A stretch of DNA of 64,000 bases from Convolutriloba macropyga. Lineage: Eukaryota. The stretch covers positions 44,888,001-44,952,000 of the forward strand of contig NC_134475.1 of assembly GCF_964194025.1 (NCBI RefSeq), in the 5' to 3' direction. The first letter of the stretch is position 1; each line of letters opens with the position of its first letter. This document shows, in pieces, positions 11,420 through 41,579 of the stretch. A program made the position numbers and the translations under genes. Below the pieces are notes generated by a model. The model saw nothing but the letters and a program-made list of their open reading frames with translations, was not told the origin of the DNA and did not search any database.

Positions 11420-14400
11420 CTTTGGGACCAAGTAAGAGTGAATAAGTTTTTTTATCCCCTATAACCATTTGAGAAACGCTAAGTATCGATTAGGTAGGCT
11501 GCAGGGGGCCAGGTATGAATGAATATGCTTTTTACCCCCCATAACCCTCTTGAGAAACGCTAAGTATCAATTTATTAGGCTGCAGGAGGACCAAGAATGA
11601 GTGAATAATTTTTTTTACCCTCTACACTATTTTTCAGAAATTCTAAGTATAGATTAGATAGGCTGCAGGGGGGCCAGGTATGAATGAATAGGTTTTTTAC
11701 CCCTATACCCTTTTTGAGAAACGCTAAGTATCGATTAGGTAGGCTGCAGGGGACCAGATATGAATGAGAAAGTTTTTTTTATACCCTGTACCTATTTTGA
11801 GAAATGCTAAGTATCGAATAGGTAGGCTGCAGGGAGACCAGGTATGAAAGAAAAAGTTTTTTGTACCGTCTCTACCCCTTTTGAGAAACGCTAAGTATCA
11901 ATTAGGTAGGCTGCAGGGGGACCAGGTTTGAATGAATAAGTTTTTCTGCGCCCTAAACCCCTTTGAGAAATGCTAAGTATCGAATAGGTAGGCTGCAGGG
12001 AGTCCAGGTATGAATGAAACAGTTTTTTTTACCATCTATGTCCCTTTTGAGAAACACTAAGTATGGATTATGTAGGCTGCAGGGGGACCAGGTACGAACG
12101 AATACGTTTTTTACCCTCTCTGCCCCTTTTGAGAAACGCTAAGTATCGATTAGGTAGGCTGCACGGGGAGCACGTATATATGAATATGTTTTTTTATCCA
12201 CTATACTCCTTTTGAGAAACGCTAAGTATCGAATAGGTAGGCTGCAGGGAGACCAAGTATGAACGAATAAGTTTTTTTACCCTCTGTATCCCTTTTGAGA
12301 AACGCTAAGTATGGATTAGATAGGCTGCAGGGAGACCAGGTATGAATGAGTAAGTTCTTTTACCCTCTGTATCCCTTTTGAGAAACGCTAAGTATGGATT
12401 AGATAGGCTGCAGGGGGACCAGGTATGAATGAGTAAGTTCTTTACTCACTATACCTCTTTTGAGAAACGCTAAGTACCGATTAGGTAGGCTGCAGGGGGA
12501 CCAGATATGAATGAATAAGTGTTTTACCCTCTATATGCCTTTTGAGAAAAGCTAAGTATCGATTAAGTAGGCTACAAGGAGACCAGGTATGAATGAAAAA
12601 GTTATTTTACCCTCTCTATCCCTTTTGAGAAACGCTAAGTATCAATTAGGTAGGCTGCAGGGGGACCAGGTTTGAATGAATAAGTTTTTCTGCGCCCTAA
12701 ACCCCTTTGAGAAATGCTAAGTATCGAATAGGAAGGCTGCAGGGAGACCAGGTATGAATGAAACAGTTTTTTTTACCATCTATTACCCTTTTGAGAAACA
12801 CTAAGCATCGATTAGGTAGGCTGCAGGGGGACCAGGTACGAATGAATGAAGTTTTTTACCCTCTCTACCCCTTTTGAGAAACGCTAAGTATCGATTAGGT
12901 AGGCTGCAGGGGGAGCACGTATATATGAAAATGTTTTTTATCCACTATACCCCTTTTGAGAAACACTAAGTATCAATTAGGTAGGCTGCAGGGAGACCAG
13001 GTATGAATGAATAAGTTTTTTTACCATCTCTACCCTTTTGAGAAACGCTAAATATCGATTAGGTAGGCTGCAGGGGGTATGATTGAATAAGTTTTTTACC
13101 CTCTACACTACTTTTCAGAAATTCTAAGTATAGATTAGATAGGCTGCAGGGCGGCCAGGTAGGAATGAATAGGTTTTTTTTACCCCTATACCATTTTTGA
13201 GAAACGCTAAGTATCGATTAGGTAGGCTGCAGGGGACCAGATATGAATGAGAAAGTTTTTTTTATCCCCTATACCCATTTTGAGAAATGCTAAGTATCAA
13301 ATAGGTAGGCTTCAGGGAGACCAGGTATTAGCGAATAAGTTTTTTACCCTCTACACTACTTTTCAGAAATTCTAAGTATGGATTAGATAGGCTGCAGGGG
13401 GACCAGGTATGAATGAGTAAGTTTTTTTACCCTCTGTATCCCTTTTGAGAAACGCTAAGTATTGATTAGATAGGCTGCAGGGGGACCAGGTATGAATGAG
13501 TAAGTTTTTTACTCCCTATACCTCTTTTGAGAAACGCTAAGTACCGAATAGGTAGGCTGCAGGGCGACCAGATATGAATGAATAAGTGTTTTACCCTCTA
13601 TATGCCTTTTGAGAAAAGCTAAGTATCGATTAAGTAGGCTACAAGGAGACCAAGTATCAATGAAAAGTTTTTTTACCCTCTCTATCCCTTTTGAGAAACG
13701 CTAAGTATCAATTAGGTAGGCTGCAGGGGGACCAGGTTTGAATGAAAACGTTTTTTTTACCATCTATACCCCTTTTGGGAAACGCTAAGTATCGAATAGG
13801 TAGGCTGCAGGGGGAGCACGTATATATGAAAATGTTTTTTATCCACTATACCCCTTTTGAGAAACACTAAGTATCAATTAGGTAGGCTGCAGGGAGACCA
13901 GGTATGAATGAATAAGTTTTTTAACCTCTACACTACTTTTCAGAAATTCTAATTATAGATTAGATAGGCTGCAGGGGGGTCAGGTATGAATGAATAGGTT
14001 TTTCTTACATCTATACCCTTTTTGAGAAACGCTAAGTATCGATTAGGTAGGCTGGAGGGGACAAGATATGAATGAGAAAATTTTTTCATCCCCTATACCC
14101 ATTTTGAGAAACGCTAAGTATCGATTAGGTAGGCTGCAGGGGGACCAGGTACGAATGAATAAATTTTTTACCCTCTACACTACTTTTCAGAAATTCTAAG
14201 TATAGATTAGATAGGCTGCAGGGGGGCCAGGTATGAATGAATAGGTTTTTTTTACCCCTATACCCTCTTTGAGAAACGCTAAGTATCGATTATGTAGGCT
14301 GCAGGGGACCAGATATGAATGAGAAAGTTTTTTTTATCCCCTATACCCATTTTGAGAAATGCTAAGTATCGAATAGGTAGGCTGCAGGGAGACCAGGTAT

Positions 14401-17400
14401 GAACGAATAAGTTTTTTTACCCTCTGTATCCCTTTTAAGAAACGCTACGTATGGATTAGATAGGCTGCAGGGGGACCAGGTATGAATGAGTAAGTTTTTT
14501 TACCCTCTGTATCCCTTTTGAGAAACGCTGAGTATGGATTAGATAGGCTGCAGGGGGACCAGGTATGAATGAGTAAGTTTTTTACTGCCTATACTTCTTT
14601 TGAGAAACGCTAAGTACCGATTAGGTAGGCTGCAGGGGGACCATGCTTGAATGAATAAGTTTTTCTGCGCCCTACACCCCTCTGAGAAATGCTAAGTATC
14701 GAATAGGTAGGCTGCAGGGAGACCAAGTATGAATGAAACAGTTTTTTTACCATCTATATCCCTTTTGAGAAACGCTAAGTACCGATTAGGTAGGCTGCAG
14801 GGGGACCATGCTTGAATGAATAAGTTTTTCTGCGCCCTACACCCCTCTGAGAAATGCTAAGTATCGAATAGGTAGGCTGCAGGGAGACCAAGTATGAATG
14901 AAACAGTTTTTTTACCATCTATATCCCTTTTGAGAAACGCTAAGTACCGATTAGGTAGGCTGCAGGGGGACCATGCTTGAATGAATAAGTTTTTCTGCGC
15001 CCTACACCCCTCTGAGAAATGCTAAGTATCGATTAGGTAGGTTTCAGGGAGGCCAGGTATGAATGAATAAGTTTTTTTACCATCTCTACCCCTTTTGAGA
15101 AACGCTAAGTATCGATTAGGTAGGCTGCAGGGGGACAAAGTATGAATGAATAAGTTTTTTACCCTCTCTTCCCCTTTTGAGAAACGCTAAGTATCGATTA
15201 GGTAGGCTGCAGGGAGACCAGGTATGAACGAAACAGTTTTTTTACCATCTATATCCCTTTTGAGAAACACTAAGTATCGATTAGGTAGGCTGAAGGGGGA
15301 CCAGGTACGAATGAATACGTTTTTTACCCTCTCTACCCCTTTTGAGAAACGCTAAGTATCGATTAGGTAGGCCGCAGGGAGACCAGGTATGAACGAAACA
15401 GTTTTTTTTACCATCTATAACCCTTTTGAGAAACGCTAAGTATCAATTAGGTAGGCTGCAGGGAGACCAGGTATGAAAGAATAACTTTTTTTTCACCCTC
15501 TATATCGCTTTTGAGAAACACTAAGTATCAATCAGGTAGGCTTCAGGAGGACCAGGTATGAACGAATAGGTTTTTTTACCCTCTAGATCCCTTTTGAGAA
15601 ACGCTAAGTTTGGATTAGATAGGCTGCAGGGTGACCAGGTATGAATTAGTAAGTTTTTAACTCCCTATACCCCTTTTGAGAAACGCTAAGTATCGATTAG
15701 GTAGGCTGTAGGGGGGCCAGATATGAATGAATAAAGTTTTCACGCTCTAAATTCCTTTTGAGAAACGCTAAGTATCGATTAAGTAGGCTACAGGGAGACC
15801 AGTTATGAATGAATAAGTTTTTTTACCCTCTATACCATTTTTGAGAAACACTAATTATCGATTAGGTAGGCTGCATGGGGACCAGGTATGAATGAAAAGG
15901 TTTTTTTACCCTCTCTATCCCTTTTGAGAAACGCTAAGTATCAATTAGGTAGGCTGCAGGGGGACCAGGTTTGGATAAATAAGTTTTTCTGCGCCCTACA
16001 CCCCTTTGAGAAATGCTAAGTATCGGATAGGTAGGCTGCAGGGAGATCAGTTATAAATGAAACAGTTTTTTTACCATCTATATCCCTTTTGAGAAAGACT
16101 AAGTATCGATTAGGTAGGCTGCAGGGGGACCAGGTATGAACGAATAAGTTTTTTCCCTCTCTATCCCTTTTGAGAAACGCTTAGTATCGATTAGGAAGGC
16201 TGCAGGGGGACCAGGTATGAATGAATAAGTTTTTTTTCCCTTTCTACCCCTTTTTAGAAACGCTAAGTATCGATTATGTAGGCTGCAGGGAGACCAGGTA
16301 TGAATGAATAAGTTAAGATTTTTAACCCTCTCTAACCCTTTTGGGAAACGCTTAGTATTGATTAGGTAGGCTGCAGGGAGACCAGGTATGAATGAATAAG
16401 TTTTTTTATCCTCTCTACCTTTTTTGAGAAACGCTTAGTATCAATTAGGTAGGCTGCAGGGAGACCAGGTATGAATGGATAAGTTTTTTTCCCTTTCTAC
16501 CCCTTTTTAGAAACGCTAAGTATCGATTATGTAGGCTGCAGGGAGACCAGGTATGAATGAATAAGTTAAGATTTTTAACCCTCTCTACCCCTTTTGGGAA
16601 ACGCTTAGTATTGATTAGGTAGGCTGCAGGGAGACCAGGTATGAATGAATAAGTTTTTTTATCCTCTCTACCTTTTTTTAGAAACGCTAAGTATCGATTA
16701 GGTAGGCTGCAGGGGGAGCAGGTATAAAATGAATATGTTTTTACCCACTATACTGCTTTTGAGAAACGCTAAGTATCGATTAGGTAGGCTGAAGGGAGAC
16801 CAGGTATGAATGAAAAAGTTTTTTTATCCTCTCTACCCCTTTTGAGAAACGCTTGGTATCGATTAGGTAGTCTGCAGGGAGACCAGGTATGAATGAATAA
16901 GTTTTTTTACCCTCTCTACCCCTTTTGAGAAACGCTTAGTATCGATTAGGTAGGCTGCAGGGGGACCAGATATGAATGAATAATTTTTTTTCCCTCTCTA
17001 CCCCTTTTTAGAAACGCTAAGTATCGATTAAGTAGGCTGCAGGGAGACCAGGTATGAATGAATAAGTTTTCTACCCTCTCTACCCCTTTTGGGAAACGCT
17101 TAGTATCGATTAGGTAGGCTGCAGGGAGACCAGGTATGAATGAAACGGTTTCTTTTATCCTCTCTACCCCTTTTGAAAAACGCTTAGTATCAATTAGGTA
17201 GGCTGCAGGGAGACCAGGTATGAATGGATAAGTTTTTTTACCCTCTCTACCCCTTTTTAGAAACGCTAAGTATCGATTAGGTAGGCTGCAGGGGGAGCAC
17301 GTATCAATGAATATGTTTTTTACCCACTATACCTCTTTTTTTAGAAACGGTAATTATCGATTAGGTAGGCTGTAGGGGGACCAGGTACGAATGAATAAGT

Positions 17401-17545
17401 TCTTTTACCCCTACACCCCTTTTGAGAAATGCTAAGTATCGACTAGGTAGGCTTCAGGGGGACAAGGTATGAACGAATAATTTTTCTACCCCAAATTTTC
17501 CTTTTGAGAAATTCTTAGTATCGATTAGGTAGGCCGCAGGGGAAT
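11420..17545 (+). repeat. Satellite A array 1 (~82-83 bp unit, about 74 copies)
   Basis: Consensus GAGAAACGCTAAGTATCGATTAGGTAGGCTGCAGGGGGACCAGGTATGAATGAATAAG(T)nACCCTCTATACCCCTTTT. Confidence 0.97.
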
Positions 17546-18247
17546 GGATGATTTAGTTTTAAAAAAGATAGTGTAAAACTCATTTCCTCATTGTCATGGA
17601 ATAGAGACGCGAAAACAACAAGTTCATAGTTACCTCCGTAGATCATCTGTGTTGATTGTAGCAATCTGTCATGATCTACCCTACAACTGACCTAAGTGTC
17701 TAAGTGATCTCAGTGACTGTTTGGGAATGGTGATAAAATTTTGTGAACTGGTGCCGTCTATTTTTCACAATAGAATTTCTCTAAACCAGCTAGTTCTACT
17801 TCCTGATCAATGGGGTTGCGAAAGTCAAGAAGGCAAAGAGTTTACTGTCGTCAAGCGAGTACAGTTCCTGTTACTCTTTGGACTATTTATCTCAATACTT
17901 GTTTCTCCAGACAAGACTTACTAATAAATTCCCCAAAATATAGTAATCATGAACAATTAATTGTACAAATAAGAGCTTCATCTAATGAATTGGAAAGAAT
18001 AATTCCTTCCGAGAAGATTGGGAAAAGATTTAGAAGTAAAGTTTGCCGTAAAAAAGATAGCAAGTTTTAACAGCACTAACCATAGCATCCTTTTCTTTCC
18101 CCCTTGCTCCCACCTTCTGCTCCCATACCCATCCTGCTCCCTACTTGCTTTCAGTTTTGCTCTCCGTTGAGCTCTACCCTCGCTCCCAGGTTTGATACTT
18201 CGCCCTGCTCCCACCTCAGTCTCCGGCATGCTCTCCTCTCCGCTTCG
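17545..18247. other. Unique block U (copy U1) between satellites A and B
   Basis: Non-tandem sequence found four times (17545, 19640, 29903, 32239); ends in a pyrimidine-rich TGCTCCC-motif tract. Confidence 0.85.
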
Positions 18248-19439
18248 TAGCTTAAGACCCAAAACACAAGTTATTTTTCACCTTTATATATATACACTCT
18301 TTATATGTTCAAGTTAAAATTCGTTTAGGTAACCAGCAGTTAACTTAGGATCCAGGGTACGAGTTATTTTTTATCAATACTCTTTATATGTACAAGTTAA
18401 AAATCGCTTAGGTAACCAGCAGGTATCTAGGATCCAATACAAAAGGTGTTTTTCACCAAAACTATTCAAATGTACAAGTTGAAACTCGCTTAGGTAACCA
18501 GCCGGTAGCTTAGAATCATATACACAAGGTATTTGTCACCAATACTCTTCATCTGTACAATTTAAATATCGCTTAGGTTACCAGCACGTAGATTAGGATT
18601 CAATACACAACTTATTTTCCACCAACCCTCTTTAGATGTATAAGTTAAATCTCGCTTAGGTAACCAGCAGTTAGCTTAGAATCCAATTCACAAGGTATTT
18701 TTCACCAAAATTCTTCGTATGTACAAGTTAAAACTCGCTTGGGCAACCAGCAGGTAGCTTGGGATCGAATACACAAGTTTTTTTTCACCAATACTCTTCA
18801 TATGTACAAGTTAAAAATCGCCTAGGTAACCAGCAGGTAGATTAGGATCCAATACACTAGTTATTTTCCACCAACCCTCTGTTTATGTACAAGTTAAAAC
18901 ACGCTTAGGTAACCACCAGTTTGCTTAGGATCCAATACACAAGATATTTTTTTACCAATACTCTTCAAATGTTCAAGTTAAAAACTGCTTATGTAAACAG
19001 CAGGTAGCTTAGGATCCAAAACACAAGGTACTTTTCACCAATGCTCTTCATATGTACAAGATAAAACTCGCTTAGGTAACCAGCAGGCAGCTTAGGATCC
19101 AAAACACAAGCTGTTTTTCACCAATACTCTTCAAATGTACAAGTTAAAACTCGCTTAAAAAACCAGCAGGTATTCCAGTATCCAATACACAAGTAATATT
19201 TTACCAATACTCTTCATATGTACAAGTTAAAACTCACTTGGGTAACCAGCAGGTAGCTTAGCATCCAAGACACAAGTTATCTTTTACCAATACATTTCAC
19301 ATTTGCAAGTTAAAAATCGCTTAGGTAACCAGCAGGTAGATTAGGATCCAATACACAAGTTATTTTCCAACAACCCTCTTTATATTTACAAGTTAAAACC
19401 CGCTTAGGTAACCAGCAGGTAGCTTAGGATCCAATACAC
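18248..19439 (+). repeat. Satellite B array 1 (~83 bp unit, about 14 copies)
   Basis: Consensus TGTACAAGTTAAAACTCGCTTAGGTAACCAGCAGGTAGCTTAGGATCCAATACACAAGTTATTTTTCACCAATACTCTTCATA. Confidence 0.95.
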
Positions 19440-19640
19440 GTTAAGTATCGGTTAGGTAGGATGCAGGGAGACCAGGTATGAATGAATAGGTTCTTTTACC
19501 CCCTACACTCCATTTGAGAAATGCTATGTATCGATTAGGTAGGCTGCAGGGTGACCAAGTATGAACGAATAATTTCTTTACCCCTATTTCCATTTTGAGA
19601 AATGCTAAGAATCGATTAGGTAGGCTGCAGGGGAATGGAT
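19440..19640 (+). repeat. Short satellite A array (about 2.5 units)
   Basis: Abrupt B-to-A switch at CCAATACAC|GTTAAGTATCG. Confidence 0.9.
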
Positions 19641-20082
19641 GAATTAGTTTTACACCGTAAAGGGTTTGCGCAAAAAAGTGCACCTTGAGAATTAGGAGAA
19701 AAGCTTTTTTCCTCATTGTCATGGAATAGAGACGCAAAAACAACAAGTTCATAGTTACCTCCGTAGATCATCTGTGTTGATGGTAGCAATCTGTCATAAT
19801 CTACCCTACAACTGATCTAAGTGTCTAATTGAGCTCAGTGACTGTTTGGGAATGGTGATGCGTGTTAAAATTTTGTAAACTGGTGTCGTCTATTTTTCGC
19901 AATAGAGTTTCTCTAAACCAGCAAGGTCCACTTCCTGATCAATGGGGTTGCCAAAGTCAAGAAGGCAAAGAGTTTACTGGCGTTAAGCGAGTACAGTTCC
20001 TGTTACTCTTTGAACTGTTTATCTCAATACTTGTTTCTCCAGACAAGACTTTCTCATAAATTCCCCAAAATATAGTAATCAT
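19620..20082 (-). pseudogene. OTU-like cysteine protease pseudogene within block U' (also about 32220-32681; more decayed in U1 and U2)
   Basis: Minus-strand frame from ATG at 20082 gives SGSGPCWFRE (19909-19938) and then LRSVVG*IM; after a frameshift, YGGNYELVVFASLF (19724-19765). These resemble the OTU motifs GDGNCLFR, LR..V...M and WGG..EL..F..LF. Confidence 0.45.
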
Positions 20083-20419
20083 GAACAATCAATTGTACAA
20101 ATAAGAGCTTCATCTAATGAAGTGGAAAGAATAATTCCTTCCGTGAAGATTGAGAAAAGATTTAGAAGTAAAGTTTGCCGTAAAAAAGATAGAAAGTTTT
20201 AACAGAATTAACCATAAAATCCTTTTCTGTCCCCCTTGCTCCCACCTTCTGCCCCATACCCATCCTGCTCCCTACCTGCTTTCAGTTTTAATCTCTGTTG
20301 AGCTCTACCCTCGCTCCCAGGTTCGATCCACCGCCCTGCTCCCACCTCGGTCTCCGGCATGCTCTCCACGGATTGTTCTCCGTTTCGCTCACACTTCTGC
20401 TTCCCACACTGCTCTAGGA

Positions 20420-20857
20420 CGTAGCTTAAGACCCAATACACAAGATATTTTTCACCATTACTCTTTATGTGTTTAAGGTAAAACTCGCTTAGGTAACCAT
20501 CAGTTAGCTTAGGATCCAAGGTACAAGTTATTTTTGATCAATACTCTTCATATGTACAAGTTAAAATTCGCTTAGGTAACCAGCAGGTATCTTAGGATCC
20601 AATACAAAAGGTATTTTTCACCAATACTATTCATATGTACAAGTTAAAACTCGCTTGGGTAACCAGCCGGTAGCTTAGAATCCAATACACAAGGTATTTC
20701 TCGCCAATACTCTTCATATGTACAATTTAAAAATCGCTTAGGTTACCAGCACGTAGATTAGGATCCAATACACAAGTTATTTTCCACCAACCCTCTTTAT
20801 ATGTATAAGTTAAAATTCGCTTAGGTAACCAGCAGGTAGCTTAGAATCCAATCAGAA
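20420..20857 (+). repeat. Satellite B array 2 (about 5 units), cut by the duplication junction
   Basis: B consensus; ends abruptly where polB sequence restarts. Confidence 0.9.
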
Positions 20858-22339
20858 TATATGGTAAACAGAGCTTTCAAAAAAACATGTGAAGGTAAAC
20901 GTAACCGGATCAAGGTCAAGCTGGTACATGATGAACATGAAGCATTGAAATCGACTAGCAGACCTTAGGTGAAAACTTTTCAAATCATTGCCAATGATTT
21001 GGCTACAGTAAGTCTCAACAAGACCAAAATATTATATGATAAACCTACAACCGTTGGAGCATGTATCCTCGACCTCTCGAAAAAATTCGTGTTTGAGTTT
21101 CACTACAAAACCATGTAACACAACTTTGAATGCAAAATCCTTTATTCTGACACGGATTAGTTTGTTTACGAGGGGCAAATAGAGGATTTTTTGTGCACAT
21201 AGAATCAAAACAAATGAAGGAGACGTTTGACTTGTCCAACTTTCCAAAGAACCATCAGCAATACGATGAAACCAACGCAAAAGTGACGCTCAAGTTCAAG
21301 AATGAGATGGCTGGTTGAACAGTGTCTGAATTTGTAGGTCTCAAGCCAAAACACTACTCGATCAAACTTTCGGAAGGTAAACATTTCTTTTTTTATTCGC
21401 TAGCTTTTTGCTTCGCAGGCGTCAAGAAAAATCAGTGAGACGACGTGATTGATGATGCACTTTTTGTCTGCTTTTTCTTTAGTAGCTACAATTGAAATCA
21501 GTTTTCTAAAATTGATCGGAAATTTTTTTCTCAAGTGATGGGAAACAGCCAGCTAAAGGTGTCACCAAAGAAGCTGGCCAGAGAATAACTCATGAATTGT
21601 ACAAGCAAGTTCTCATGGGTGGAGATACTGTGTGCCTGGTAAATACAAGAATTGCATCAAGCAAACATCAGTTGATGACAGTTATTAACAACAAAAAATC
21701 GTTGTCCGGATACGACGACAAGCGCTATCTTTGCCAGGACAAAATAACGACGCTACCATACGGCCATGAGCAGTTGCGAGATGAAATGTTTGCAAAACAG
21801 ATTATTGCAACCCAGATTGGGGTTCAAGTGATAAGAGTGAGAACGAAGTCCTGGCAGAGTCTTCCTTGGGACAAAGACCATCACCTACTCATTATACTCC
21901 ACAACCAGAGCTGCAAGGGTTTTGGTCTCCCCCTTAACTGGATCTCAACCAACGATCATACAGCAATGATGAACTTGAAGGGTACTTGATTGACTTTGAA
22001 CTGTTGAGTGAACAAGAAGACACTTCCGACCACGACAGGTGCTTATTTTTAGACGATGAAGCCCTGGAATCAGATTGAAGTGAAAGTATTCTCGACATTT
22101 GCACTACCTCAGCAGTGTTTTCTCTCGAAAACCCTCCTGATGAGCCACGAAAAAAAAAAACAAAATGCAGGTCAGACTCGAATCTGGACAAGAACAGCGT
22201 CCTTAATATTACACCAAAAAAATATCTCACAAGCCCAAAACAGTTTGAAATTGTTTCCGACGACGACAGTGATATTCCTCAGAAAATCAAGAAGCGGTCA
22301 GTAATTGAACTGGACTTTGATAGTGCTGGTCCGCTATAA
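20858..22339 (+). pseudogene. polB: Duplicated 3' part of polB
   Basis: Copy of 9485-10963; has YSDTD; the intron-2 acceptor is mutated (CAG to CAA). Confidence 0.9.
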
Positions 22340-22799
22340 ATTCATGACTCTATCTACCGTTCATGACAATCAGTTATGTGGTAATGTGGTTGTCTACCTT
22401 CCGGTTTGGCCTACATACCGTAAATAAAAAACTTTTCACTTCATCTCCCAGTGAAGTCAAAAATTTTTCTACAACAAGGGACACTATCTAAATCATTACA
22501 CAGTAGGATTTAAATAAACGGATATCTTTTTTTAGATGAGTTCAAATTCTATTGAAAATTTTGTCTAATAGCTTGGCTCCTGGTAGCTAGGATTGAATAT
22601 TTAGATCTTTTTTACCCTTATGAGCACTACAGAACACTCGTCTTGAATGGCTCGGCTTTGTTAACCCCTAAGGTTACTACAGAAGACGATAACCCTCAAA
22701 TAGCTCAAATATCGGTATGCTAGGATTGAACATAATAAATCATTTTTGACCTTTAGGGCACTACAGAACACGTTAAATACCGAAACAATAATTTTCTTA

Positions 22800-29903: not shown

Positions 29904-30605
29904 TGGATGATTTAGTTTTAAAAAAGATAGTGTAAAACTCATTTCCTCATTGTCATGGAATAGAGACGCGAAAACAACAAGTTCATAGTTACCTCCGTAG
30001 ATCATCTGTGTTGATTGTAGCAATCTGTCATGATCTACACTACAACTGACCTAAGTGTCTAAGTGATCTCAGTGACTCTTTGGGAATGGTGATAAAATTT
30101 TGTGAACTGGTGCCGTCTATTTTTCACAATAGAATTTCTCTAAACCAGCTAGTTCTACTTCCTGATCAATGGGGTTGCGAAAGTCAAGAAGCCAAAGAGT
30201 TTACTGTCGTCAAGCGAGTACAGTTCCTGTTACTCTTTGGACTATTTATCTCAATACTTGTTTCTCCAGACAAGACTTACTAATAAATTCCCCAAAATAT
30301 AGTAATCATGAACAATTAATTGTAGAAATAAGAGCTTCATCTAATGAATTGGAAAGAATAATTCCTTCCGAGAAGATTGGGAAAAGATTTAGAAGTAAAG
30401 TTTGCCGTAAAAAAGATAGCAAGTTTTAACAGCACTAACCATAGCATCCTTTTCTTTCCCCCTTGCTCCCACCTTCTGCTCCCATACCCATCCTGCTCCC
30501 TACTTGCTTTCAGTTTTGCTCTCCGTTGAGCTCTACCCTCGCTCCCAGGTTTGATACTTCGCCCTGCTCCCACCTCAGTCTCCGGCATGCTCTCCTCTCC
30601 GCTTC

Positions 30606-32039
30606 GTAGCTTAAGACCCAAAACACAAGTTATTTTTCACCAATACTCTTTATATGTTCAAGGTAAAATTCGTTTAGGTAACCAGCAGTTAACTTAGGAT
30701 CCAGGGTACGAGTTATCTTTTATCAATACTCTTTATATGTTCAAGTTGAAAATCGCTTAGGTAACCAGCAGGTATCTAGGATCCAATACAAAAGGTGTTT
30801 TTCACCAAAACTATTCAAATGTACAAGTTGAAATTCGCTTGGGTAACCAGCAGGTAGATTAGAATCCAATACACAAGTTATTTTCCACCAACCCTTTTTA
30901 TATATACAAGTTAAAACTCGCTTAGGTAACCAGCCGGTAGCTTAGAATCGTATACACAAGGTATTTGTCACCAATACTCTTCATCTGTACAATTAAAAAA
31001 TCGCTTAGGTTACCAGCACGTAGATTAGGATTCAATACACAACTTATTTTCCACCAACCCTCTTTAGATGTATAAGTTAAAACTCGCTTAGGTAACCAGC
31101 AGTTAGCTTAGAATCCAATTCACAAGGTAGTTTTCACCAAAACTCTTCATATGTACAAGTTAAAACTCGCTTGCGTAACCATCGGGTAGCTTGGGATCAA
31201 ATACACCACTTATTTTTCACCAATTCTCTTCATATGTACAAGTTAAAAATCGCCTAGGTAATCAGCAGGTAGATTAGGATCCAATACACAAGTTATTTTC
31301 CACCAACCCTCTTTTTATAAACAAGTTAAAACTCGCTTAGGTAACCAGCAGGTAGCTTAGGATCCAAAACACTAGGTACTTTTCACCAATTCTCTTCATA
31401 TGTACAAGTTAAAAATCGCCTAGGTAACCAGCAGGTAGATTAGGATCCAATACACTAGTTATTTTCCACCAACCCTCTGTTTATGTACAAGTTAAAACTC
31501 GCTTAGGTAACCACCAGTTTGCTTAGGATCCAATACACAAGATATTTTTTTTACCAATACTCTTCAAATGTTCAAGTTAAAAACTGCTTAGGTAAACAGC
31601 AGGTAGCTTAGGATCCAAAACACAAGGTACTTTTCACCAATGCTCTTCATATGTACAAGATAAAACTCGCTTAGGTAACCAGCAGGCAGCTTAGGATCCA
31701 AAACACAAGCTGTTTGTCACCAATACTCTTCAAATGTACAAGTTAAAACTCGCTTAAAAAACCAGCAGGTATTTCAGTATCCAATACACAAGTAATATTT
31801 TACCAATACTCTTCATATGTACAAGTTAAAACTCACTTGGGTAACCAGCAGGTAGCTTAGCATCCAAGACACAAGTTATCTTTTACCAATACATTTCACA
31901 TTTGCAAGTTAAAAATCGCTTAGGTAACCAGCAGGTAGATTAGGATCCAATACACAAGTTATTTTCCAACAACCCTCTTTATATTTACAAGTTAAAACCC
32001 GCTTAGGTAACCAGCAGGTAGCTTAGGATCCAATACACG
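30606..32039 (+). repeat. Satellite B array 3 (about 17 copies)
   Basis: B consensus; followed by a short A array (32040-32239) and block U' (32239-33020). Confidence 0.95.
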
Positions 32040-33019
32040 TTAAGTATCGATTAGGTAGGATGCAGGGAGACCAGGTATGAATGAATAGGTTCTTTTACCC
32101 CCTACACTCCATTTGAGAAATGCTATGTATCGATTAGGTAGGCTGCAGGGGGACCAAGTATGAACGAATAATTTCTTCACCCCTATTTCCATTTTGAGAA
32201 ATGCTAAGTATCGATTAGTTAGGCTGCAGGGGAATGGATGAATTAGTTTTACACCGTAAAGGGTTTGCGCAAAAAAGTGCACTTTGAGAATTAGGAGAAA
32301 AGCTTTTTTCCTCATTGTCATGGAATAGAGACGCAAAAACAACAAGTTCATAGCTACCTCCGTAGATCATCTGTGTTGATGGTAGCAATCTGTCATAATC
32401 TACCCTACAACTGATCTAAGTGTCTAATTGAGCTCAGTGACTGTTTGGGAATGGTGATGCGTGTTAAAATTTTGTAAACTGGTGTCGTCTATTTTTCGCA
32501 ATAGAGTTTCTCTAAACCAGCAAGGTCCACTTCCTGATCAATGGGGTTGCCAAAGTCAAGAAGGCAAAGAGTTTACTGGCGTTAAGAGAGTACAGTTCCT
32601 GTTACTCTTTGAACTGTTTATCTCAATACTTGTTTCTCCAGACAAGACTTTCTCATAAATTCCCCAAAATATAGTAATCATGAACAATTAATTGTACAAA
32701 TAAGAGCTTCATCTAATGAAGTGGAAAGAATAATTCCTTCCGTGAAGATTGAGAAAAGATTTAGAAGTAAAGTTTGCCGTAAAAAAGATAGAAAGTTTTA
32801 ACAGAATTAACCATAAAATCCTTTTCTGTCCCCCTTGCTCCCACCTTCTGCCCCATACCCATCCTGCTCCCTACTTGCTTTCAGTTTTAATCTCTGTTGA
32901 GCTCTACCCTCGCTCCCAGGTTCGATCCACCGCCCTGCTCCCAACTCGGTCTCCGGCATGCTCTCCACGGATTGTTCTCCGTTTCGCTCACACTTCTGCT
33001 TCCCACACTGCTCTAGGAC

Positions 33020-36000
33020 GTAGCTTATGACCCAATACACAAGATATTTTTCACCATTACTCTTTATGTGTTTAAGGTAAAACTCGCTTAGGTAACCATC
33101 AGTTAGCTTAGGATCCAAGGTACAAGTTATTTTTGATCAATACTCTTCATATGTACAAGTTAAAATTCGCTTAGGTAACCAGCAGGTATCTTAGGATCCA
33201 ATACAAAAGGTATTTTTCACCAATACTATTCATATGTACAAGTTAAAACTCGCTTGGGTAACCAGCCGGTAGCTTAGAATCCAATACACAAGGTATTTCT
33301 CACCAATACTCTTCATATGTACAATTTAAAAATCGCTTAGGTTACCAGCACGTAGATTAGGATCCAATACACAAGTTATTTTCCACCAACCCTCTTTATA
33401 TGCATAAGTTAAAATTCGCTTAGGTAACCAGCAGGTAGCTTAGAATCCAATCACAAGGTAAATTTCACCAAAACTCTTCATATGTACAAGTTAAAAAAAT
33501 TGCTTAGGTTACCAGCACGTAGATTAGGATCCAATGCACAAGTTATTTTCCACCAGCCCTCTTTATATGTATAACTTAAAATTCGCTTAGGTAACCAGCA
33601 GGTAGCTTAGAATCCAATTCACAAGGTAATTTTCACCAAAACTCTTCATATGTACAAGTTAAAATTCGCTTGCGTAACCATCGGGTAGCTTGGGATCGAA
33701 TACATCACTTATTTTTCACCAATTCTCTTCATATGTACAAGTTAAAAATCGCCTAGGTAATCAGCAGGTAGATTAGGATCCATTACACAAGTTATTTTCC
33801 ACCAACCCTCTATTTATAAACAAGTTAAAACTCGCTTAGGTAACCAGCAGGTAGCTTAGGGTCCAATACATAAGATATTTTTCTACCAACACTCTTCAAA
33901 TGTACAAGTTAAAAACTGCTTATGTAACCAGCAGGTAGCTTAAGATCCAAAACACAATGTACTTTTCACCAATGCTCTTCATATGTACAAGTTAAAACTC
34001 GCTTAGGTAACTATCAGGCAGCTTAGGATCCAATACACAAGCTGTTTTTCACCAAAACTCTTCATATGTACAAGTTAAAAAAATTGCTTAGGTTACCAGC
34101 ACGTAGATTAGGATCCAATGCACAAGTTATTTTCCACCAGCCCTCTTTATATGTATAACTTAAAATTCGCTTAGGTAACCAGCAGGTAGCTTAGAATCCA
34201 ATTCACAAGGTAATTTTCACCAAAACTCTTCATATGTACAAGTTAAAACTCGCTTGCGTAACCATCGGGTAGCTTGGGACCGAATACACCGCTTATTTTT
34301 CACCAATTCTCTTCATATGTACAAGTTAAAATTCGCCTAGGTAATCAGCAGGTAGATTAGGATCCATTACACAAGTTATTTTCCACCAACCCTCTATTTA
34401 TAAACAAGTTAAAACTCGCTTAGGTAACCAGCAGGTAGCTTAGGGTCCAATACATAAGATATTTTTCTACCAATACTCTTCAAATGTACAAGTTAAAAAC
34501 TGCTTAATTAACCAGCAGGTAGCTTAAGATCCAAAACACTATGTACTTTTCACCAATGCTCTTCATATGTACAAGTTAAAACGCGCTTAGGTAACCAGCC
34601 GAAAGCTTAGAATCCAATACACAAGGTATATCTCACCAACACTCTTGGTATGTACAAGTTAAAAATCGCTTAGGTTACCAGCCCGTAGATTAGGATCCAA
34701 TACACAAGTTGTTTTCACCAAAACTCTTCATATGTACAAGTTAAAACTCGCTTGAGTAACCAGCGGGTAGCTTGGGATCGAATACACAACTTATTTTTCA
34801 CCAATACTCTTCATATGTACAAGTTAAAAATCGCCTAGGTAATCAGCAGGTAGATTAGGATCCAATACACAAGTTATTTTCCACCAACCCTCTTTTTATA
34901 AACAAGTTAAAACTCGCTTAGGTAACCAGCAGGTAGCTTAGGATCCAAAACACTAGGTACTTTTCACCAATGCTCTTTATATGTACAAGTTAAAACTCGC
35001 TTAGGTAACCATCAGGCAGCTTAGGATCCAATAAACAAGCTGTTTTTCACCAATACTCTTCATATGTACAAGTTAAAAAATTGCTTAGGTTACCAGCACG
35101 TAGATTAGGATCCAATACACAAGTTATTTTCCACCAGCCCTCTTTATATGTATAACTTAAAATTCGCTTAGGTAACCAGCAGGTAGCTTAGAATCCAATT
35201 CACAAGGTAGTTTTCACCAAAACTCTTCATATGTACAAGTTAAAACTCGCTTGCGTAACCATCGGGTAGCTTGGGATCAAATACACCACTTATTTTTCAC
35301 CAATTCTCTTCATATGTACAAGTTAAAAATCGCCTAGGTAATCAGCAGGCAGATTAGGATCCAATACACAAGTTATTTTCCACCAACCCTCTATTTATAA
35401 ACAAGTTAAAACTCGCTTAGGTAACCAGCAGGTAGCTTAGGGTCCAATACAGAAGATATTTTTCTACCAATACTCTTCAAATGTACAAGTTAAAAACTGC
35501 TTAGATAACAAGCAGGTAGCTTAGGATCCAAAAGACTATGTACTTTTCACCAATGCTCTTCATATGTACATGTTGAAACTCGATTAGGTAACCAGCCGGT
35601 AGCTTAGAATCCAATACACAAGGTATTTCTCACAAATACTCTTGGTATGTACAAGTTAAAAATTGCTTAGGTTACCAGCTCGTAGATTAGGATCCAAAAC
35701 ACAAGTTATTTTTACCAAAACTCTTCATATGTACAAGTTAAAACTTGCTTGCGTAACCAGCGGGTAGCTTAGGATCGAATACACAACTTATTTTTCACTA
35801 ATACTCTTCATATGTACAAGTTGAAAATCGCTCAGGTAACCAGCAGGTAGCTTAGGTTCCAAGACACAAGATATTTTTCTAACAAAACTCTTCAAATGTA
35901 CAAATTAAAACTTGCTTAGGTAACCAGCAGGCAGCTTAGGATCCAGTACACAAGCTGTTTTTTACCAATTCTCTTCAAATATACAATTTTAAAACTCGCT

Positions 36001-39000
36001 TAGGTAACCAGCAGGTAGCTTAGCATCCAATACACAAGTTATCTTTTACCAATTCATTTCATATGTACAAGTTAAAAATCGTTTAGGTAAGCAGCAGGTA
36101 GATTAGGATCTAATACACAAGTTATTTTCCACCAACCCTCATTATATGCACAAGTTAAAACTCGCTTGGGTAACCAGCAGGTAGCTTAGGATCCAATACA
36201 CAAGTAATGATTTACCAATACATTTCATATGTACAAATTAAAAATCGTTTAGGTAAGCAGCAGGTAGATTAAGATCCAATACACAAGTTATTTTCCAACA
36301 ACCCTCTTCATATGTACAAGTTAAAATTGGCTTAGTTAACCAGCAGTTAACTTAGGAACCAATACACAAGGTATTTTTCACCAAAACTCTTCATATGTAC
36401 AAGTTAAATCTCGCTTGGGTTACCAGCAAGTAGCTTAGGATCCAATACAAGTTGTTTTTCGCCAATACTCTTCAAATGTACAAATTAAAAACCGCTTAGG
36501 TAACCATCAGGTAGCTTAGGATCCAAAACACAAGGTACTTTTTACCAATGATCTTCATATGTACAAGTTAAAACTCGCTTAGGTAACCGGCAGGCAGCTT
36601 AGGATCCAATACACAAGCTGTTTTTCACCAATACTCTTCAAATGTACAAGTTAAAGCTCGCTTAGGTAACCAGCAGGTATTTCAGGATCCAATACACAAG
36701 TAATATTTTACCAATACTCTTTATATGTAAAAGTTAAATTTCGCTTGGGTAACCAGCAGGTAGCTTAGAATCCAATTCACAAGGTAGTTTTCACCAAAAC
36801 TCTTCATATGTACAAATTAAAACTCGCTTGCGTAACCATCGGGTAGCTTGGGATCAAATACACCACTTTTTTTTCACCAATTCTCTTCATATGTACAAGT
36901 TAAAAATCGCCTAGGTAATCAGCAGGCAGATTAGGATCCAATACACAAGTTATTTTCCACCAACCCTCTATTTATAAACAAGTTAAAACTCGCTTAGGTA
37001 ACCAGCAGGTAGCTTAGGGTCCAATACAGAAGATATTTTTCTACCAATACTCTTCAAATGTACAAGTTAAAAACTGCTTAGATAACAAGCAGGTAGCTTA
37101 GGATCCAAAAGACTATGTACTTTTCACCAATGCTCTTCATATGTACATGTTGAAACTCGATTAGGTAACCAGCCGGTAGCTTAGAATCCAATACACAAGG
37201 TATTTCTCACAAATACTCTTGGTATGTACAAGTTAAAAATTGCTTAGGTTACCAGCTCGTAGATTAGGATCCAATACACAAGTTATTTTTACCAAAACTC
37301 TTCATATGTACAAGTTAAAACTTGCTTGCGTAACCAGCGGGTAGCTTAGGATCGAATACACAACTTATTTTTCACTAATACTCTTCATATTTACAAGTTG
37401 AAAATCGCTCAGGTAACCAGCAGGTAGCTTAGGTTCCAAGACACAAGATATTTTTCTAACAAAACTCTTCAAATGTACAAGTTAAAACTAGCTTAGGTAA
37501 CCAGCAGGCAGCTTAGGATCCAGTACACAAGCTGTTTTTTACCAATTCTCTTCAAATATACAATTTTAAAACTCGCTTAGGTAACCAGCAGGTAGCTTAG
37601 CATCCAATACACAAGTTATCTTTTACCAATTCATTTCATATGTACAAGTTAAAAATCGTTTAGGTAAGCAGCAGGTAGATTAGGATCTAATACACAAGTT
37701 ATTTTCCAACAACCCTCATTATATGCACAAGTTAAAACTCGCTTGGGTAACCAGCAGGTACCTTAGGATCCAATACACAAGTAATGATTTACCAATACAT
37801 TTCATATGTACAAATTAAAAATCGTTTAGGTAAGCAGCAGGTAGATTAAGATCCAATACACAAGTTATTTTCCAACAACCCTCTTCATATGTACAAGTTA
37901 AAATTGGCTTAGTTAACCAGCAGTTAACTTAGGAACCAATACACAAGGTATTTTTCACCAAAACTCTTCATATGTACAAGTTAAATCTCGCTTGGGTTAC
38001 CAGCAAGTAGCTTAGGATCCAATACAAGTTGTTTTTCACCAATACTCTTCAAATGTACAAATTAAAAACCGCTTAGGTAACCATCGGGTAGCTTAGGATC
38101 CAAAACACAAGGTACTTTTTACCAATGATCTTCATATGTACAAGTTAAAACTCGCTTAGGTAACCGGCAGGCAGCTTAGGATCCAATACACAAGCTGTTT
38201 TTCACCAATACTCTTCAAATGTACAAGTTAAAGCTCGCTTAGGTAACCAGCAGGTATTTCAGGATCCAATACACAAGTAATATTTTACCAATACTCTTTA
38301 TATGTACAAGTTAAATTTCGCTTGGGTAACCAGCAGATAGCTTAGCATCCAATACACAAATCATCTTTGACCAATACATTTCATATGTACAAGTTAAAAA
38401 TCGCTTAGGTAAGCACCAGGTAGATTAAGATCCAATACACAATTTATTTTCCAACAACCCTCTTTATATGTACAAGTTAAAACTGGCTTAGGTAATTAGC
38501 AGGTAGCTTAGCATCCAATACACAAATTATCTTTGACCAATACATTTCAAATGTACAAAATAAAACTCGCTTGGGTAACCAGCAGGTAGCTTAGGATCCA
38601 ATACACAAGTGATGTTTTACCAATACATTTCATATGTACACGTTAAAAATCGCTTACGTAAGCAGCAGGTAGATTAAGATCCAAAACACAAGTTATTTTC
38701 TAACAACCCTCTTCATATGTACAAGTTAAAACTGGCTTAGGTAACCAGCAGGTAGCTTAGGATCCAATACACAAGATATTTTTCACAAAAACTCTTCATA
38801 TGTACAAGTTAAATCTCGCTTGGGTAACCAGCAGGTAGCTTAGGATCCAATACAAAATGTTTTTCACCAATACTCTTCATATGTACAAATTAAAAACCGC
38901 TTAGGTAACCATCAAGTAGCTTAGGATCCAAAACAGAAGGTACTTTTTACCAATGCTCTTCATATGTACAAGTTAAAACTCGCTTAGGTAACCAGCAGGT

Positions 39001-39835
39001 AGATTAGGATCCAATACACAAGTTATTTTCCAACAACCCTCTTTATATGTACAAGTTAAAACTGGCTTAGGTAATTAGCAGGTAGCTTAGGATCCAATAC
39101 ACAAGGTATTTTTCACCAAAACTCTTCATATGTACAAGTTAAAACTCGCTTAGTAACCAGCAGTTAGCTTAGGATCCAATACAAGTTGTTTTTCACCAAT
39201 ACTCTCCATATGTACAAATTAAAAACCGCTTAGGTAACCATCAAGTACCTTAGAATCCAAAACAGAAGGTACTTTTTACCAATGCTCTTCATATGTACAA
39301 GTTAAAACTCGCTTAGGTAACCAGCAGGCAGCTTAGTGTCCAATACAAAAGCTGTTTTTCACCATACTCTTCAAATGTACAAGTTAAAACTCGCTTAGGT
39401 AACCAGCAGGTATTTCAGGATCCAATACACAAGTAATATTTTACCAATACTCTTTTTATGTACAAGTGAAAACTCGCTTGCGTAACCATGTAATCAGCAG
39501 GTAGCTTAGCATCCAATACACAAGTTATCTTTTACCAATACATTTTATATGTACAAGTTAAAAATCGCTAAGGTAAGCAGCAGGTAGATTAGTACCCAAT
39601 GCACAAGTTATTTTCCAATAACCCTCTTTAGATGTACAAGTTAAAACTCGGTTAAGTAACCAGCAGGTAGCTTAGGATCCAACACACAAGATACTTTTCT
39701 ACCAATAGTCTTCAAATGTACAAGTTAAAAACTGCTTGGGTAACCAGCAGGTAGCTTAGGATCCAATACACAAGTTATTTTTCTCAATACTCATTTATGT
39801 ACGAGTTAAAATTCGCTTCGGTAACCAACAGCTTA
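33020..39835 (+). repeat. Satellite B long array (about 82 copies) with higher-order duplications
   Basis: B consensus; fades into degenerate units up to about 39960. Confidence 0.97.
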
Positions 39836-41465: not shown

Positions 41466-41579
41466 TACAACTAATCTCAAAGTAAACAAATACAATTAGA
41501 CACAGCGCTTCGATAAACAGGACAATTGAAATTACTACAGTTGTAGAATTTGAACTAAATCTTCAGAGAGGCGAAAGTG

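What the first reader, a model, noticed from the sequence alone, without database searches (positions are those of the whole stretch)
11420..39835. Satellites A and B are distant homologs with a conserved, phased motif skeleton
Consensus A TAAGTATCGATTAGGTAGGCTGCAGGGGGACCAGGTATGAATGAATAAGTTTTTTT and B TAAAACTCGCTTAGGTAACCAGCAGGTAGCTTAGGATCCAATACACAAGTTATTTT align without gaps at 36/56 positions (hand count). Shared are TCGnTTAGGTA, GCAGG, AGG, AAT and AAGTT. The three AGG start at positions 13, 24 and 33, about one helical turn apart. Both keep a ~83-bp period, so a dimer is ~165 bp (nucleosome scale). Fixed length and motifs despite separate homogenisation suggest constraint such as a protein-binding site (inference).
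Basis: partly seen in the sequence, partly recalled or inferred. Interest (0 to 1): 0.7.

Follow-up and report, generated by a model that had tools for sequence, protein, structure and literature searches.

The report
Related satellites inside a bloated Maverick transposon
The two 83-bp satellites really are distant relatives, but they are the internal tandem-repeat region of a single giant virus-like transposon (a Polinton/Maverick), and their shared motifs look like inheritance from a common ancestor, not a selected protein-binding site.

Summary
Majority consensuses from 147 A and 110 B units match at 36/56 positions, exactly as counted, and at 43/83 over the whole unit. No dinucleotide shuffle out of 2000 reaches 43 (z=5.6). 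All 225 weak profile cross-hits fall on the same strand and in the same register.

The constraint reading is not supported. Shared positions are no less variable than the others in any of 13 arrays. Six of 14 consensus changes between loci hit shared positions. The GCAGG motif is lost in the B arrays of two loci. There is no dimeric higher-order repeat.

The new result concerns context. The whole block lies inside one Polinton/Maverick insertion of about 45.4 kb. It has AGTAGTATA...TATACTACT termini, ~90-bp inverted ends and a 6-bp target duplication (AATAAG). Four other copies on other contigs of the same sample carry the same module after the last ORF: array 1, a ~0.7-kb spacer, then the B array. 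One is an intact 18.2-kb element with a TSD. Array 1 is A in two of them and an unrelated 84-bp repeat, C, in the other two.

In the window the arrays grew from about 6-26 units to 75-87 units, and an 11.4-kb segment was tandemly duplicated. This is satellite DNA born from a transposon's internal repeats, which is a known process, here with an unusual host element.

The parts
1..41739 (+). Body of one Polinton/Maverick insertion. Its left terminus lies 3,627 bp upstream of window position 1 (L079:4840). Total length is about 45,367 bp.
   Evidence: Window 1-9605 is 100% identical to L079 8468-18072. Termini, TIR and TSD were read.
2150..2470 (+). Adenovirus-type cysteine protease fragment (Peptidase_C5) of the element.
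   Evidence: Pfam PF00770, E=4.5e-5, 23.7 bits against a cutoff of 21.3.
2..6608 (+). Older internal tandem duplication of the capsid-like/protease region (2-3104 matches 3400-6608 at 85-88%). The ORFs are broken into pieces.
   Evidence: Self-blastn; ORF list.
6857..11140 (+). Region homologous to the pPolB gene and the two ORFs after it in the intact copy. Here it is split into short ORFs.
   Evidence: 80.2% identity to L080 12259-16615, which holds DNA_pol_B_2 at 12968-14371. Pfam finds no hit on the window fragments.
9485..11422 (+). Segment L, copy 1: the 3' part of the pPolB region up to the start of the A array.
   Evidence: 98.3% identical to 20858-22798.
11131..11423 (+). About 3.5 decayed edge units ahead of the A array, mixing A-like and B-like states. 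The twin copy is at about 22507-22799.
   Evidence: Weak A-model hit at 11190-11248. 36-nt repeats at 11226, 11276 and 11360. Local alignments to A and B. This stretch is absent in the intact copy, where A starts right after CACAGTAGGAT.
11424..17559 (+). Satellite A, array 1 (~75 units of 82-83 bp).
17560..18246 (+). Spacer S, copy 1a: unique non-coding sequence with no ORF and no Rfam match.
   Evidence: 99.4% identical to 29919-30605 and 92% to the two S' copies. 84-86% identical to the spacers of L083 and L080. Rfam negative.
18247..19441 (+). Satellite B, array 1 (~14 units). It starts at unit position 27.
19442..19655 (+). A' : 2.5 units of an A variant. It is joined to the preceding B array, which breaks off near unit position 46.
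19656..20413 (+). Spacer S', copy 2a.
   Evidence: 99.2% identical to 32255-33012.
20414..20853 (+). Satellite B, array 2 (~5 units), cut near unit position 42 by the junction of the 11.4-kb tandem duplication.
20858..22798 (+). Segment L, copy 2.
22800..29917 (+). Satellite A, array 2 (~87 units), the recent twin of array 1.
   Evidence: Each A1 unit has a 97.6% twin here, with piecewise-constant offsets.
29919..30605 (+). Spacer S, copy 1b.
30606..32040 (+). Satellite B, array 3 (~17 units), the twin of array 1.
32041..32254 (+). A', second copy.
32255..33012 (+). Spacer S', copy 2b.
33013..39956 (+). Satellite B, array 4 (~84 units). It contains an internal duplication of 19 units and decays at its end.
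   Evidence: Lag-19 identity is 0.885 against ~0.81 elsewhere.
39957..41654 (+). Unique 1.7-kb stretch between the B array and the right TIR. It is not alignable with the equivalent 1.8 kb of the intact copy.
41655..41739 (-). Right terminal inverted repeat, ending ...GTATACTACT.
   Evidence: Alignment of its reverse complement to L079 4840-4905.
41740..41745 (.). Target-site duplication AATAAG. Its partner is at L079:4834-4839, just outside the left terminus.
   Evidence: Sequences printed.

Best explanation
A and B are two anciently diverged subfamilies of one ~83-bp tandem repeat. The repeat belongs to the non-coding region between the last ORF and the right inverted terminus of a Polinton/Maverick lineage. 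The element carries a fixed module: array 1, then a ~0.7-kb unique spacer S, then array 2 (B). The module is copied whenever the element transposes, so A and B were already distinct in the ancestor of the copies examined. Their shared motifs are residual ancestral sequence.

In the window the element is a dead copy with broken genes. Its arrays grew by unequal exchange or replication slippage from the 6-26 units seen in other copies to 75-87 units. The A-S-B module was duplicated once long ago (S and S' are 92% identical). An 11.4-kb segment was then duplicated in tandem recently (98-99% identity). Together these inflated an ~18-kb element to ~45 kb and produced a ~28-kb satellite-like block.

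Shown: the homology of A and B; the element boundaries, TIR and TSD; the module in five loci; the duplications; and block indels of whole units. Inferred: the mechanism of expansion, the neutrality of the shared positions, and the order of events.
For: Homology of A and B:
- 43/83 identity against shuffles, z=5.6; gapped z=6.7.
- All 225 cross-hits share one strand and register offset 0.
- Decayed edge units are intermediate between A and B.

Inside one element:
- The left terminus AGTAGTATACATAGC... is at L079:4840, and the right terminus ...GCTATGTATACTACT is at window 41739.
- The inverted ends are ~90 bp, and both are flanked by AATAAG.
- A second copy (L082+L081 joined, contig ctg37205) is a textbook element of 18,248 bp. 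It has a ~100-bp near-perfect TIR, the same AG...CT termini and the TSD CACACT. Its genes include rve (34.8 bits), Peptidase_C5 and DNA_pol_B_2.
- In that copy the A array (19.8 units), S and the B array (24 units) lie between the last ORF and the right TIR.

Other contigs:
- L087 has A (13 units), S, B (6 units).
- L083 and L088 have C (22 and 26 units of 84 bp), S, B (11 and 9 units).

Neutrality:
- Shared and non-shared positions are equally variable in 13 arrays.
- 6 of 14 between-locus consensus changes fall on shared positions.
- The B consensus of the C-lineage differs by 4 positions from the window's, while S differs by ~15%. About 5-6 changes would be expected per lineage, so the consensus is not slower than the spacer (arithmetic is mine).

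Expansion by unit-scale exchange:
- A1 and A2 units pair at 97.6% identity with piecewise-constant offsets.
- The B array has a 19-unit internal duplication.
- The duplication junction lies inside a B unit.
Against: A-B similarity is uneven along the unit: 36/56 against 7/27 (Fisher p=0.002, scan-corrected p=0.028). The 27-bp tail is not significantly alignable (p=0.15). Uniform neutral decay without indels does not predict this.

All five copies keep a two-array module with an 82-84 bp period, even where array 1 is the undetectably related C. That could hint at a constraint on period or function.

The variability tests use mostly decayed arrays, in which selection would have stopped. They therefore have little power against constraint acting only in active elements.

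Only five loci were reachable. The window's 11.4-kb duplication could not be checked against reads, and the independent ENA contig of this locus stops at window 9605, 120 bp into the duplicated segment.
Confidence: 0.78

Rival explanations
1. One reading: the shared, phased skeleton (TCGnTTAGGTA, GCAGG, AGG, AAT, AAGTT) is held by selection as a protein-binding or nucleosome-positioning platform. In the new context it could be a cis-element of the Polinton, for example for packaging, replication or an element-encoded zinc-finger protein.
For: The similarity is concentrated in one 56-bp core (scan p=0.028). The AGG spacing of 11 and 9 occurs in 1.2% of shuffles that have at least 3 AGG. The module is present at the same place in all five copies, and the period of 82-84 bp is kept even with a different repeat, C. 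The ORF before pPolB has sub-threshold C2H2 zinc-finger hits.
Against: Shared positions are not less variable in any of 13 arrays. Consensus changes between loci hit shared positions as often as the others (6 of 14). GCAGG is lost in the B arrays of L083 and L088. A has a fourth AGG at position 17, and the W/WW 10.4-bp harmonics are not significant. There is no dimeric higher-order repeat. The units show no fold propensity. The array consensus evolves about as fast as the spacer S.
Confidence: 0.12
2. A and B are ordinary host satellites, and the Polinton merely landed next to or within them. The association would then be a segmental-duplication accident.
For: The window copy is heavily rearranged, and the arrays are far longer than in other copies.
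Against: The arrays lie between the TIRs, and matching 6-bp TSDs flank the element in two independent elements. Five loci on five contigs, with unrelated flanks, carry the module at the same position after the last ORF. Homology between loci stops at the element ends.
Confidence: 0.04
3. The A-B resemblance is chance between two AT-rich repeats of similar length.
For: A stringent local alignment score is only z=2.1. Individual cross-hits have E values of 0.002-10.
Against: 0 of 2000 shuffles reach 43/83 even with free rotation and strand. The gapped test gives z=6.7. The best register is the same one in which both arrays abut the same spacer, on the same strand. The edge units are intermediate between A and B.
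Confidence: 0.02
4. The size of the block is partly an assembly artefact, for example two haplotypes or collapsed reads stitched in tandem.
For: The two 11.4-kb copies differ by only 1-2%. The independent ENA contig of this locus ends at window 9605, 120 bp into the duplicated segment L.
Against: The junction is a clean join with no N run and a short AAT microhomology, inside a B unit. The two copies differ by many whole-unit indels. The older A-S-B / A'-S'-B duplication (92% identity) is independent of the recent one.
Confidence: 0.1

Closest known systems
Satellite DNA born from tandem repeats inside transposable elements, such as PisTR-A from the hypervariable 3' untranslated region of Ogre LTR retrotransposons in pea, the central repeats of Helentron/DINE-TR1, and Tetris in Drosophila virilis. 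These examples are from my own knowledge, not a tool result.
   Same: A short tandem array in a non-coding part of a mobile element varies in copy number between copies. In some copies it expands to kilobase arrays that look like satellite DNA.
   Different: The host element here is a Polinton/Maverick. The module is bipartite: two homologous but 48% diverged arrays separated by a conserved spacer. The whole expansion is still enclosed by the element's TIRs and TSD.
Polinton/Maverick self-synthesising transposons. Their defining features (TIRs of 46-1,447 bp, 6-bp TSD, sizes of 12.7-24.6 kb, core genes) are as summarised in PMC8097293.
   Same: rve integrase, adenovirus-type protease, protein-primed polymerase B, AG...CT termini, TIRs and a 6-bp TSD.
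   Different: The window copy is ~45 kb, about twice the largest intact vertebrate element in that survey, because of internal arrays and duplications. I found no published description of a conserved internal two-array module, though the search was limited.
Satellite DNAs with Repbase similarity to Polintons: LmiSat34-299 in locust (PMC4935994) and CgiSat52-1656 in Pacific oyster (PMC8268682).
   Same: Tandemly repeated DNA related to Polinton sequence has been seen before.
   Different: The locust monomer matches Polinton coding sequence, and the oyster one is a 1,656-bp monomer labelled DNA/Polinton. Here the repeat is a short 83-bp non-coding unit that is a regular component of the element.
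Satellite 'library' or superfamily concept: related monomer families that share conserved and variable segments. From my own knowledge.
   Same: Two monomer families of equal length share a more conserved 56-bp segment and a variable 27-bp segment.
   Different: The two families are not alternatives amplified in different species or chromosomes. They are fixed neighbours within one mobile element.
Poxvirus terminal tandem repeats: in vaccinia, two blocks of 70-bp repeats separated by a unique spacer inside the inverted terminal repeat. Adenovirus packaging A-repeats are a second analogy. Both are recalled from memory and are analogy only.
   Same: Blocks of short tandem repeats are split by a unique spacer near one end of a linear dsDNA virus-like genome.
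   Different: Here the arrays are not part of the inverted terminal repeat: no inverted A or B units occur at the left end. There is no sequence relation, and no function has been tested.

Membership tests
Polinton/Maverick element (the container) | Terminal inverted repeats with 5'-AG...CT-3' ends | tested here: met
   Window element: L079 4840-4905 pairs with window 41739-41655. Intact copy: 8918-9017 pairs with 27173-27062, near perfect.
Polinton/Maverick element (the container) | 6-bp target-site duplication | tested here: met
   AATAAG on both sides of the window element. CACACT on both sides of the intact copy.
Polinton/Maverick element (the container) | Protein-primed family B DNA polymerase | tested here: met
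   PF03175 on L080 12968-14371 and on L088. The window's own copy is broken into short ORFs with no Pfam hit, but is 80% identical in DNA to that gene region.
Polinton/Maverick element (the container) | Retroviral-type (rve) integrase | tested here: met
   PF00665, 34.8 bits against a cutoff of 32.6, on L080 7420-8130. A weak hit on L079 7309-7578 lies upstream of the window.
Polinton/Maverick element (the container) | Adenovirus-type cysteine protease | tested here: met
   PF00770 on window 2150-2470, E=4.5e-5, above the cutoff.
Polinton/Maverick element (the container) | Packaging ATPase and jelly-roll capsid proteins | tested here: inconclusive
   Pfam gives no hit on the candidate ORFs of L080. 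There is only a faint Pox_A32 hit in the distant copy L085. No structure prediction was run.
Satellite DNA (long head-to-tail arrays of one monomer) | Arrays of many kilobases with a defined monomer | tested here: met
   6.1, 7.1 and 6.9-kb arrays of 82-83 bp units, 80-83% matches.
Satellite DNA (long head-to-tail arrays of one monomer) | High genomic abundance, or arrays independent of any mobile element | not testable with these tools
   The source genome is not searchable here. The one metagenome scan returned only chance hits. All five loci seen lie inside Polintons.
One satellite superfamily (A and B homologous) | Similarity above composition-matched chance, in a single register and strand | tested here: met
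   z=5.6 ungapped and 6.7 gapped. 225 of 225 cross-hits are at offset 0.
One satellite superfamily (extended to the C repeat) | C is homologous to A or B | tested here: not met
   z=0.2 against A and 1.7 against B. Only weak profile hits, with a mixed register on B.
Functionally constrained satellite motif (CENP-B-box-like) | Motif positions less variable than the rest, within and between arrays | tested here: not met
   GCAGG is replaced in two loci.
Dimeric higher-order repeat of nucleosome size | Identity at lag 2 clearly above lag 1 | tested here: not met
   Differences of 0.00-0.02 only. TRF's 165-bp period is no better than the 82-bp one.

The most novel reading that the evidence does not exclude
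The two-array module (array 1, spacer S, array 2, with an 82-84 bp period) may be a functional cis-region of this Polinton/Maverick lineage. It could serve as a binding platform for an element-encoded zinc-finger or packaging/replication protein, or as a small-RNA or heterochromatin decoy. On this reading the period and the 56-bp core are maintained in active copies, and the window shows only its runaway, decayed form.
Probability: 0.12. Interest if true: 0.7.

Novelty: new member of a known kind. Interest (0 to 1): 0.4.

Why it matters

The context is more useful. It is a clean case, still enclosed by TIRs and a TSD, of a satellite-like block of ~28 kb growing out of the internal repeats of a Polinton/Maverick. 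Intact sister copies show the starting state of 6-26 units.

This gives a dated, stepwise picture of how satellite DNA can be seeded by a virus-like transposon. It also flags a conserved non-coding module of these elements whose role, if it has one, is unknown.

Finally, it warns annotators that long 83-bp arrays in this genome should be masked as part of a mobile element and not called independent satellites.

Tried and rejected
- Literature search for the unit sequences found nothing. Searches on an 83-bp satellite and on Polinton plus satellite found only incidental mentions.
- A metagenome-contig scan with the shared skeleton pattern gave 78 loci, all chance single hits plus one unrelated 48-bp repeat. 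None matched the A or B profiles.
- Rfam found no match, either at gathering thresholds on the whole window or in E-value mode on S and on the left end of the intact copy.
- Exact look-up of two window ORFs found no record. A third ORF did have a record, and that opened the way to the sister copies.
- I tested whether the arrays are part of the TIR. No inverted A or B units occur at the left ends, and one weak by-alignment candidate in L083 was not confirmed.
- I tested whether C is a diverged A or B. This was not supported.
- I tested for hairpin or palindrome units of the baculovirus hr type. DNA folding z-scores were 0.1 to 2.6, so there is no such structure.
- I tested whether an internal sub-repeat explains the AGG spacing. 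Lag-20 self-similarity is 10/17 in B (p=0.003) and 8/17 in A (p=0.054), uncorrected for 20 lags. This is suggestive only, and lag 11 is not significant.
- The organism was not identified. The sister contigs come from ENA analysis ERZ25071359, and the tools give no taxon for it.
Only the non-coding repeat units were summarised.
Full report
**1. Observation**

Tandem Repeats Finder reports two repeat families in the window. A has a period of 82-83 bp and lies at 11424-17542 and 22800-29902. Short A variants lie at 19442-19632 and 32041-32232. B has a period of 83 bp and lies at 18296-19439, 20421-20852, 30606-32038 and 33020-39831.

I used profile searches to cut out 147 full A units and 110 full B units, all on the + strand. 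They agree at 36 of the first 56 positions, exactly the hand count, and at 43 of 83 overall, without gaps.

The similarity is above chance.
- I allowed every rotation and both strands. Dinucleotide shuffles of B then give a best identity of 32.9 ± 1.8 (maximum 41), and none of 2000 reaches 43 (z=5.6).
- A gapped global score gives z=6.7.
- All 225 weak cross-hits of the A profile on B units, and of B on A, fall on the same strand with the unit origins coinciding exactly.
- About 3.5 decayed units at the upstream edge of the A array (11131-11423) combine B-like states (GGTAGC-TAGGAT) with A-like states (TGAAT...TTTTTTACCC).

So A and B are homologous.

**2. The constraint inference**

The first, a score not above shuffles, did not occur. 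The second did.
- Positions shared by A and B are no more conserved within the arrays than other positions. The mean consensus frequencies are 0.910 vs 0.890 in A (p=0.42) and 0.886 vs 0.889 in B (p=0.82).
- After finding sister loci I repeated the test on 13 arrays from five loci, with the same result.
- Between loci, the array consensuses differ at 14 positions, and 6 of these are shared positions, where about 7 are expected.
- In two loci the B consensus reads CCCAAGG where the window has CAGCAGG, so the 'conserved' GCAGG is gone.
- There is no dimeric higher-order repeat. Unit identity at lag 2 exceeds lag 1 by 0.00-0.02, and TRF's 165-bp period fits no better than the monomer.

The AGG positions are correct at 13, 24 and 33, but A has a fourth AGG at 17. 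Among shuffles with three or more AGG, 1.2% show two successive gaps of 9-12. That is a post hoc figure for a pattern that counts only once, because it is shared by descent. The general 10.4-bp harmonics of A/T content are not significant.

A weak lag-20 self-similarity within positions 6-42 hints that two of the AGGs belong to an old internal sub-repeat. The units have no fold propensity.

First, the similarity is uneven: 36/56 against 7/27, with a scan-corrected p of 0.028. Second, the 27-bp tail is not significantly alignable.

**3. What the block is**

Masking the arrays and comparing the window with itself reveals a nested structure.
- A 1.9-kb segment L (9485-11422) recurs at 20858-22798 with 98.3% identity.
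- A ~0.7-kb spacer S occurs four times. 17560-18246 matches 29919-30605 at 99.4%, 19656-20413 matches 32255-33012 at 99.2%, and the two pairs are 92% alike.

The order of parts is L, A(75 units), S, B(14), A'(2.5), S', B(5), then L, A(87), S, B(17), A'(2.5), S', B(84). This reflects two events:
- an old duplication of an A-S-B module;
- a recent 11.4-kb tandem duplication, whose junction joins a B unit near position 42 to sequence like that at 9485.

Each unit of the first A array has a 97.6% twin in the second. The offsets change in steps of whole units, and the long B array contains a 19-unit internal duplication. The arrays therefore change by unit-scale gain and loss, not by rapid homogenisation.

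**4. Context**

Upstream of the arrays the ORFs resemble a Polinton/Maverick. A Peptidase_C5 fragment lies at 2150-2470. There are polymerase-like fragments, and an older internal duplication (2-3104 against 3400-6608).

One window ORF has more than 200 relatives, all from one ENA assembly, analysis ERZ25071359. Fetching their contigs gave five informative loci.
- **L079.** It is the same locus as window 1-9605 at 100% identity, and it extends 8.5 kb further upstream.
- **ctg37205 (L080, L081, L082).**
  - This is an intact-looking element with a ~100-bp near-perfect TIR, AGTAG...CTACT termini and the 6-bp duplication CACACT. It measures 18,248 bp.
  - It encodes an rve integrase, Peptidase_C5 and DNA_pol_B_2.
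  - Between its last ORF and its right TIR lie an A array (19.8 units, 95% matches), an S spacer and a B array (24 units).
- **L087.** It has A (13 units), S, B (6 units).
- **L083 and L088.** Each has a different 84-bp repeat, C (22 and 26 units), then S, then B (11 and 9 units). C shows no significant similarity to A or B.

Homology between loci stops at the element ends.

The window's own element has matching ends. The left terminus is at L079:4840, and the right terminus is at window 41739. The inverted ends are ~90 bp, and AATAAG lies on both sides. The entire satellite block is therefore inside a single insertion of about 45.4 kb. That is roughly 2.5 times the size of its intact sister. 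It is also well above the 12.7-24.6 kb range reported for intact vertebrate Mavericks (PMC8097293).

**5. How it most likely works**

The module of array 1, S and B is part of the element and is copied with it. A and B were therefore already distinct in the common ancestor of these copies. The A-B distance of 0.77 substitutions per site (Jukes-Cantor) is several times the 15-25% divergence among the copies.

The array consensuses have changed little between loci: 1-4 positions. This does not call for selection. A consensus of many independently decaying units stays ancestral. Where arrays were recently re-expanded, the number of fixed changes (4 in the B arrays of the C lineage) is about what the ~15% divergence of S predicts (arithmetic is mine).

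In the window, a dead copy with broken genes expanded its arrays by unequal exchange or slippage and by two segmental duplications. The duplications and block indels are shown directly. The mechanism and its neutrality are inferred.

**6. Comparison with what is known**

Satellite DNA arising from tandem repeats inside mobile elements is well documented for LTR retrotransposons, Helitron-like elements and MITEs (my own knowledge). Satellites with Repbase similarity to Polintons have been listed in locust and oyster.

I found no description of a conserved two-array non-coding module in Polintons, or of an 83-bp Polinton-borne satellite. The literature search was limited. I therefore file this as a new member of a known kind.

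The resemblance to poxvirus terminal repeat blocks or adenovirus packaging repeats is analogy from memory only. The arrays are not part of the TIR.

**7. Limits**

- The organism is unknown.
- The variability tests rest largely on decayed arrays.
- The window's recent duplication is unverified by reads, and the independent contig of this locus ends 120 bp into the duplicated segment.
- The N run at 61877-62076 was left untouched.

**8. Verdict**

The constraint, protein-binding and nucleosome readings are not supported. The real finding is a Polinton/Maverick whose internal repeat module has blown up into a satellite-like block. Interest is moderate.

Noticed in passing
window 62077-64000: Another satellite, with a 174-bp unit (359-bp higher period, ~80% matches), starts right after the N run 61877-62076 and runs off the window end.
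   Followed up: no
window ~55700-61300, minus strand: Decayed LTR-retrotransposon-like ORFs: integrase-like at 55762-56022, reverse-transcriptase-like with YIDD at 58138-58512, gag-like at 61024-61299. These were judged by eye only; Pfam gave no hit on the two ORFs tested.
   Followed up: partly
window 43161-43297: A 32/65-bp minisatellite (GTTTTCGTCGG...), about 4 copies.
   Followed up: no
L079 4840-4960 (upstream of the window): The left TIR of the window's element is followed immediately by an inverted copy of itself, giving a foldback of about 2 x 60 bp. The right TIR carries a 22-bp insert relative to the left.
   Followed up: partly
L082 9030-9100 and L083 5255-5325: Just inside the left TIR, both copies share a stretch that resembles the 3' half of a tRNA on the minus strand (TCGCCCCGGTGGGATTCGAACC). 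ARAGORN and Rfam find nothing there.
   Followed up: yes
L083 16597-18451; L088 16169-18374: In two sister elements the first array is a different 84-bp repeat (C), with no detectable similarity to A or B but the same position and nearly the same period. It is open whether this is a replacement or divergence beyond recognition.
   Followed up: partly
L086 13982-16445; L085 259-760; L083 2405-2982; L083 20276-20452 and L088 20036-20212: Other tandem arrays occur in and around related Polintons. A 117-bp x21 array sits inside a distant copy. 29-bp CTTGCAAGA arrays lie upstream of two copies. A 48-bp x3.7 repeat follows the B array in the C lineage.
   Followed up: no
L080 11887-12756; window 2975-3352 and 6503-7183: The ORF preceding pPolB in this lineage begins with a C2H2-like zinc finger. 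Pfam hits are sub-threshold (best E=0.0019).
   Followed up: partly
window 2-3104 vs 3400-6608: There is an older tandem duplication (85-88% identity) of the capsid-like and protease region within the same element, with ORFs broken in both copies.
   Followed up: partly
window 33013-39956: A 19-unit (1,577-bp) internal duplication lies within the long B array. Unit identity at lag 19 is 0.885, against ~0.81 at other lags.
   Followed up: yes
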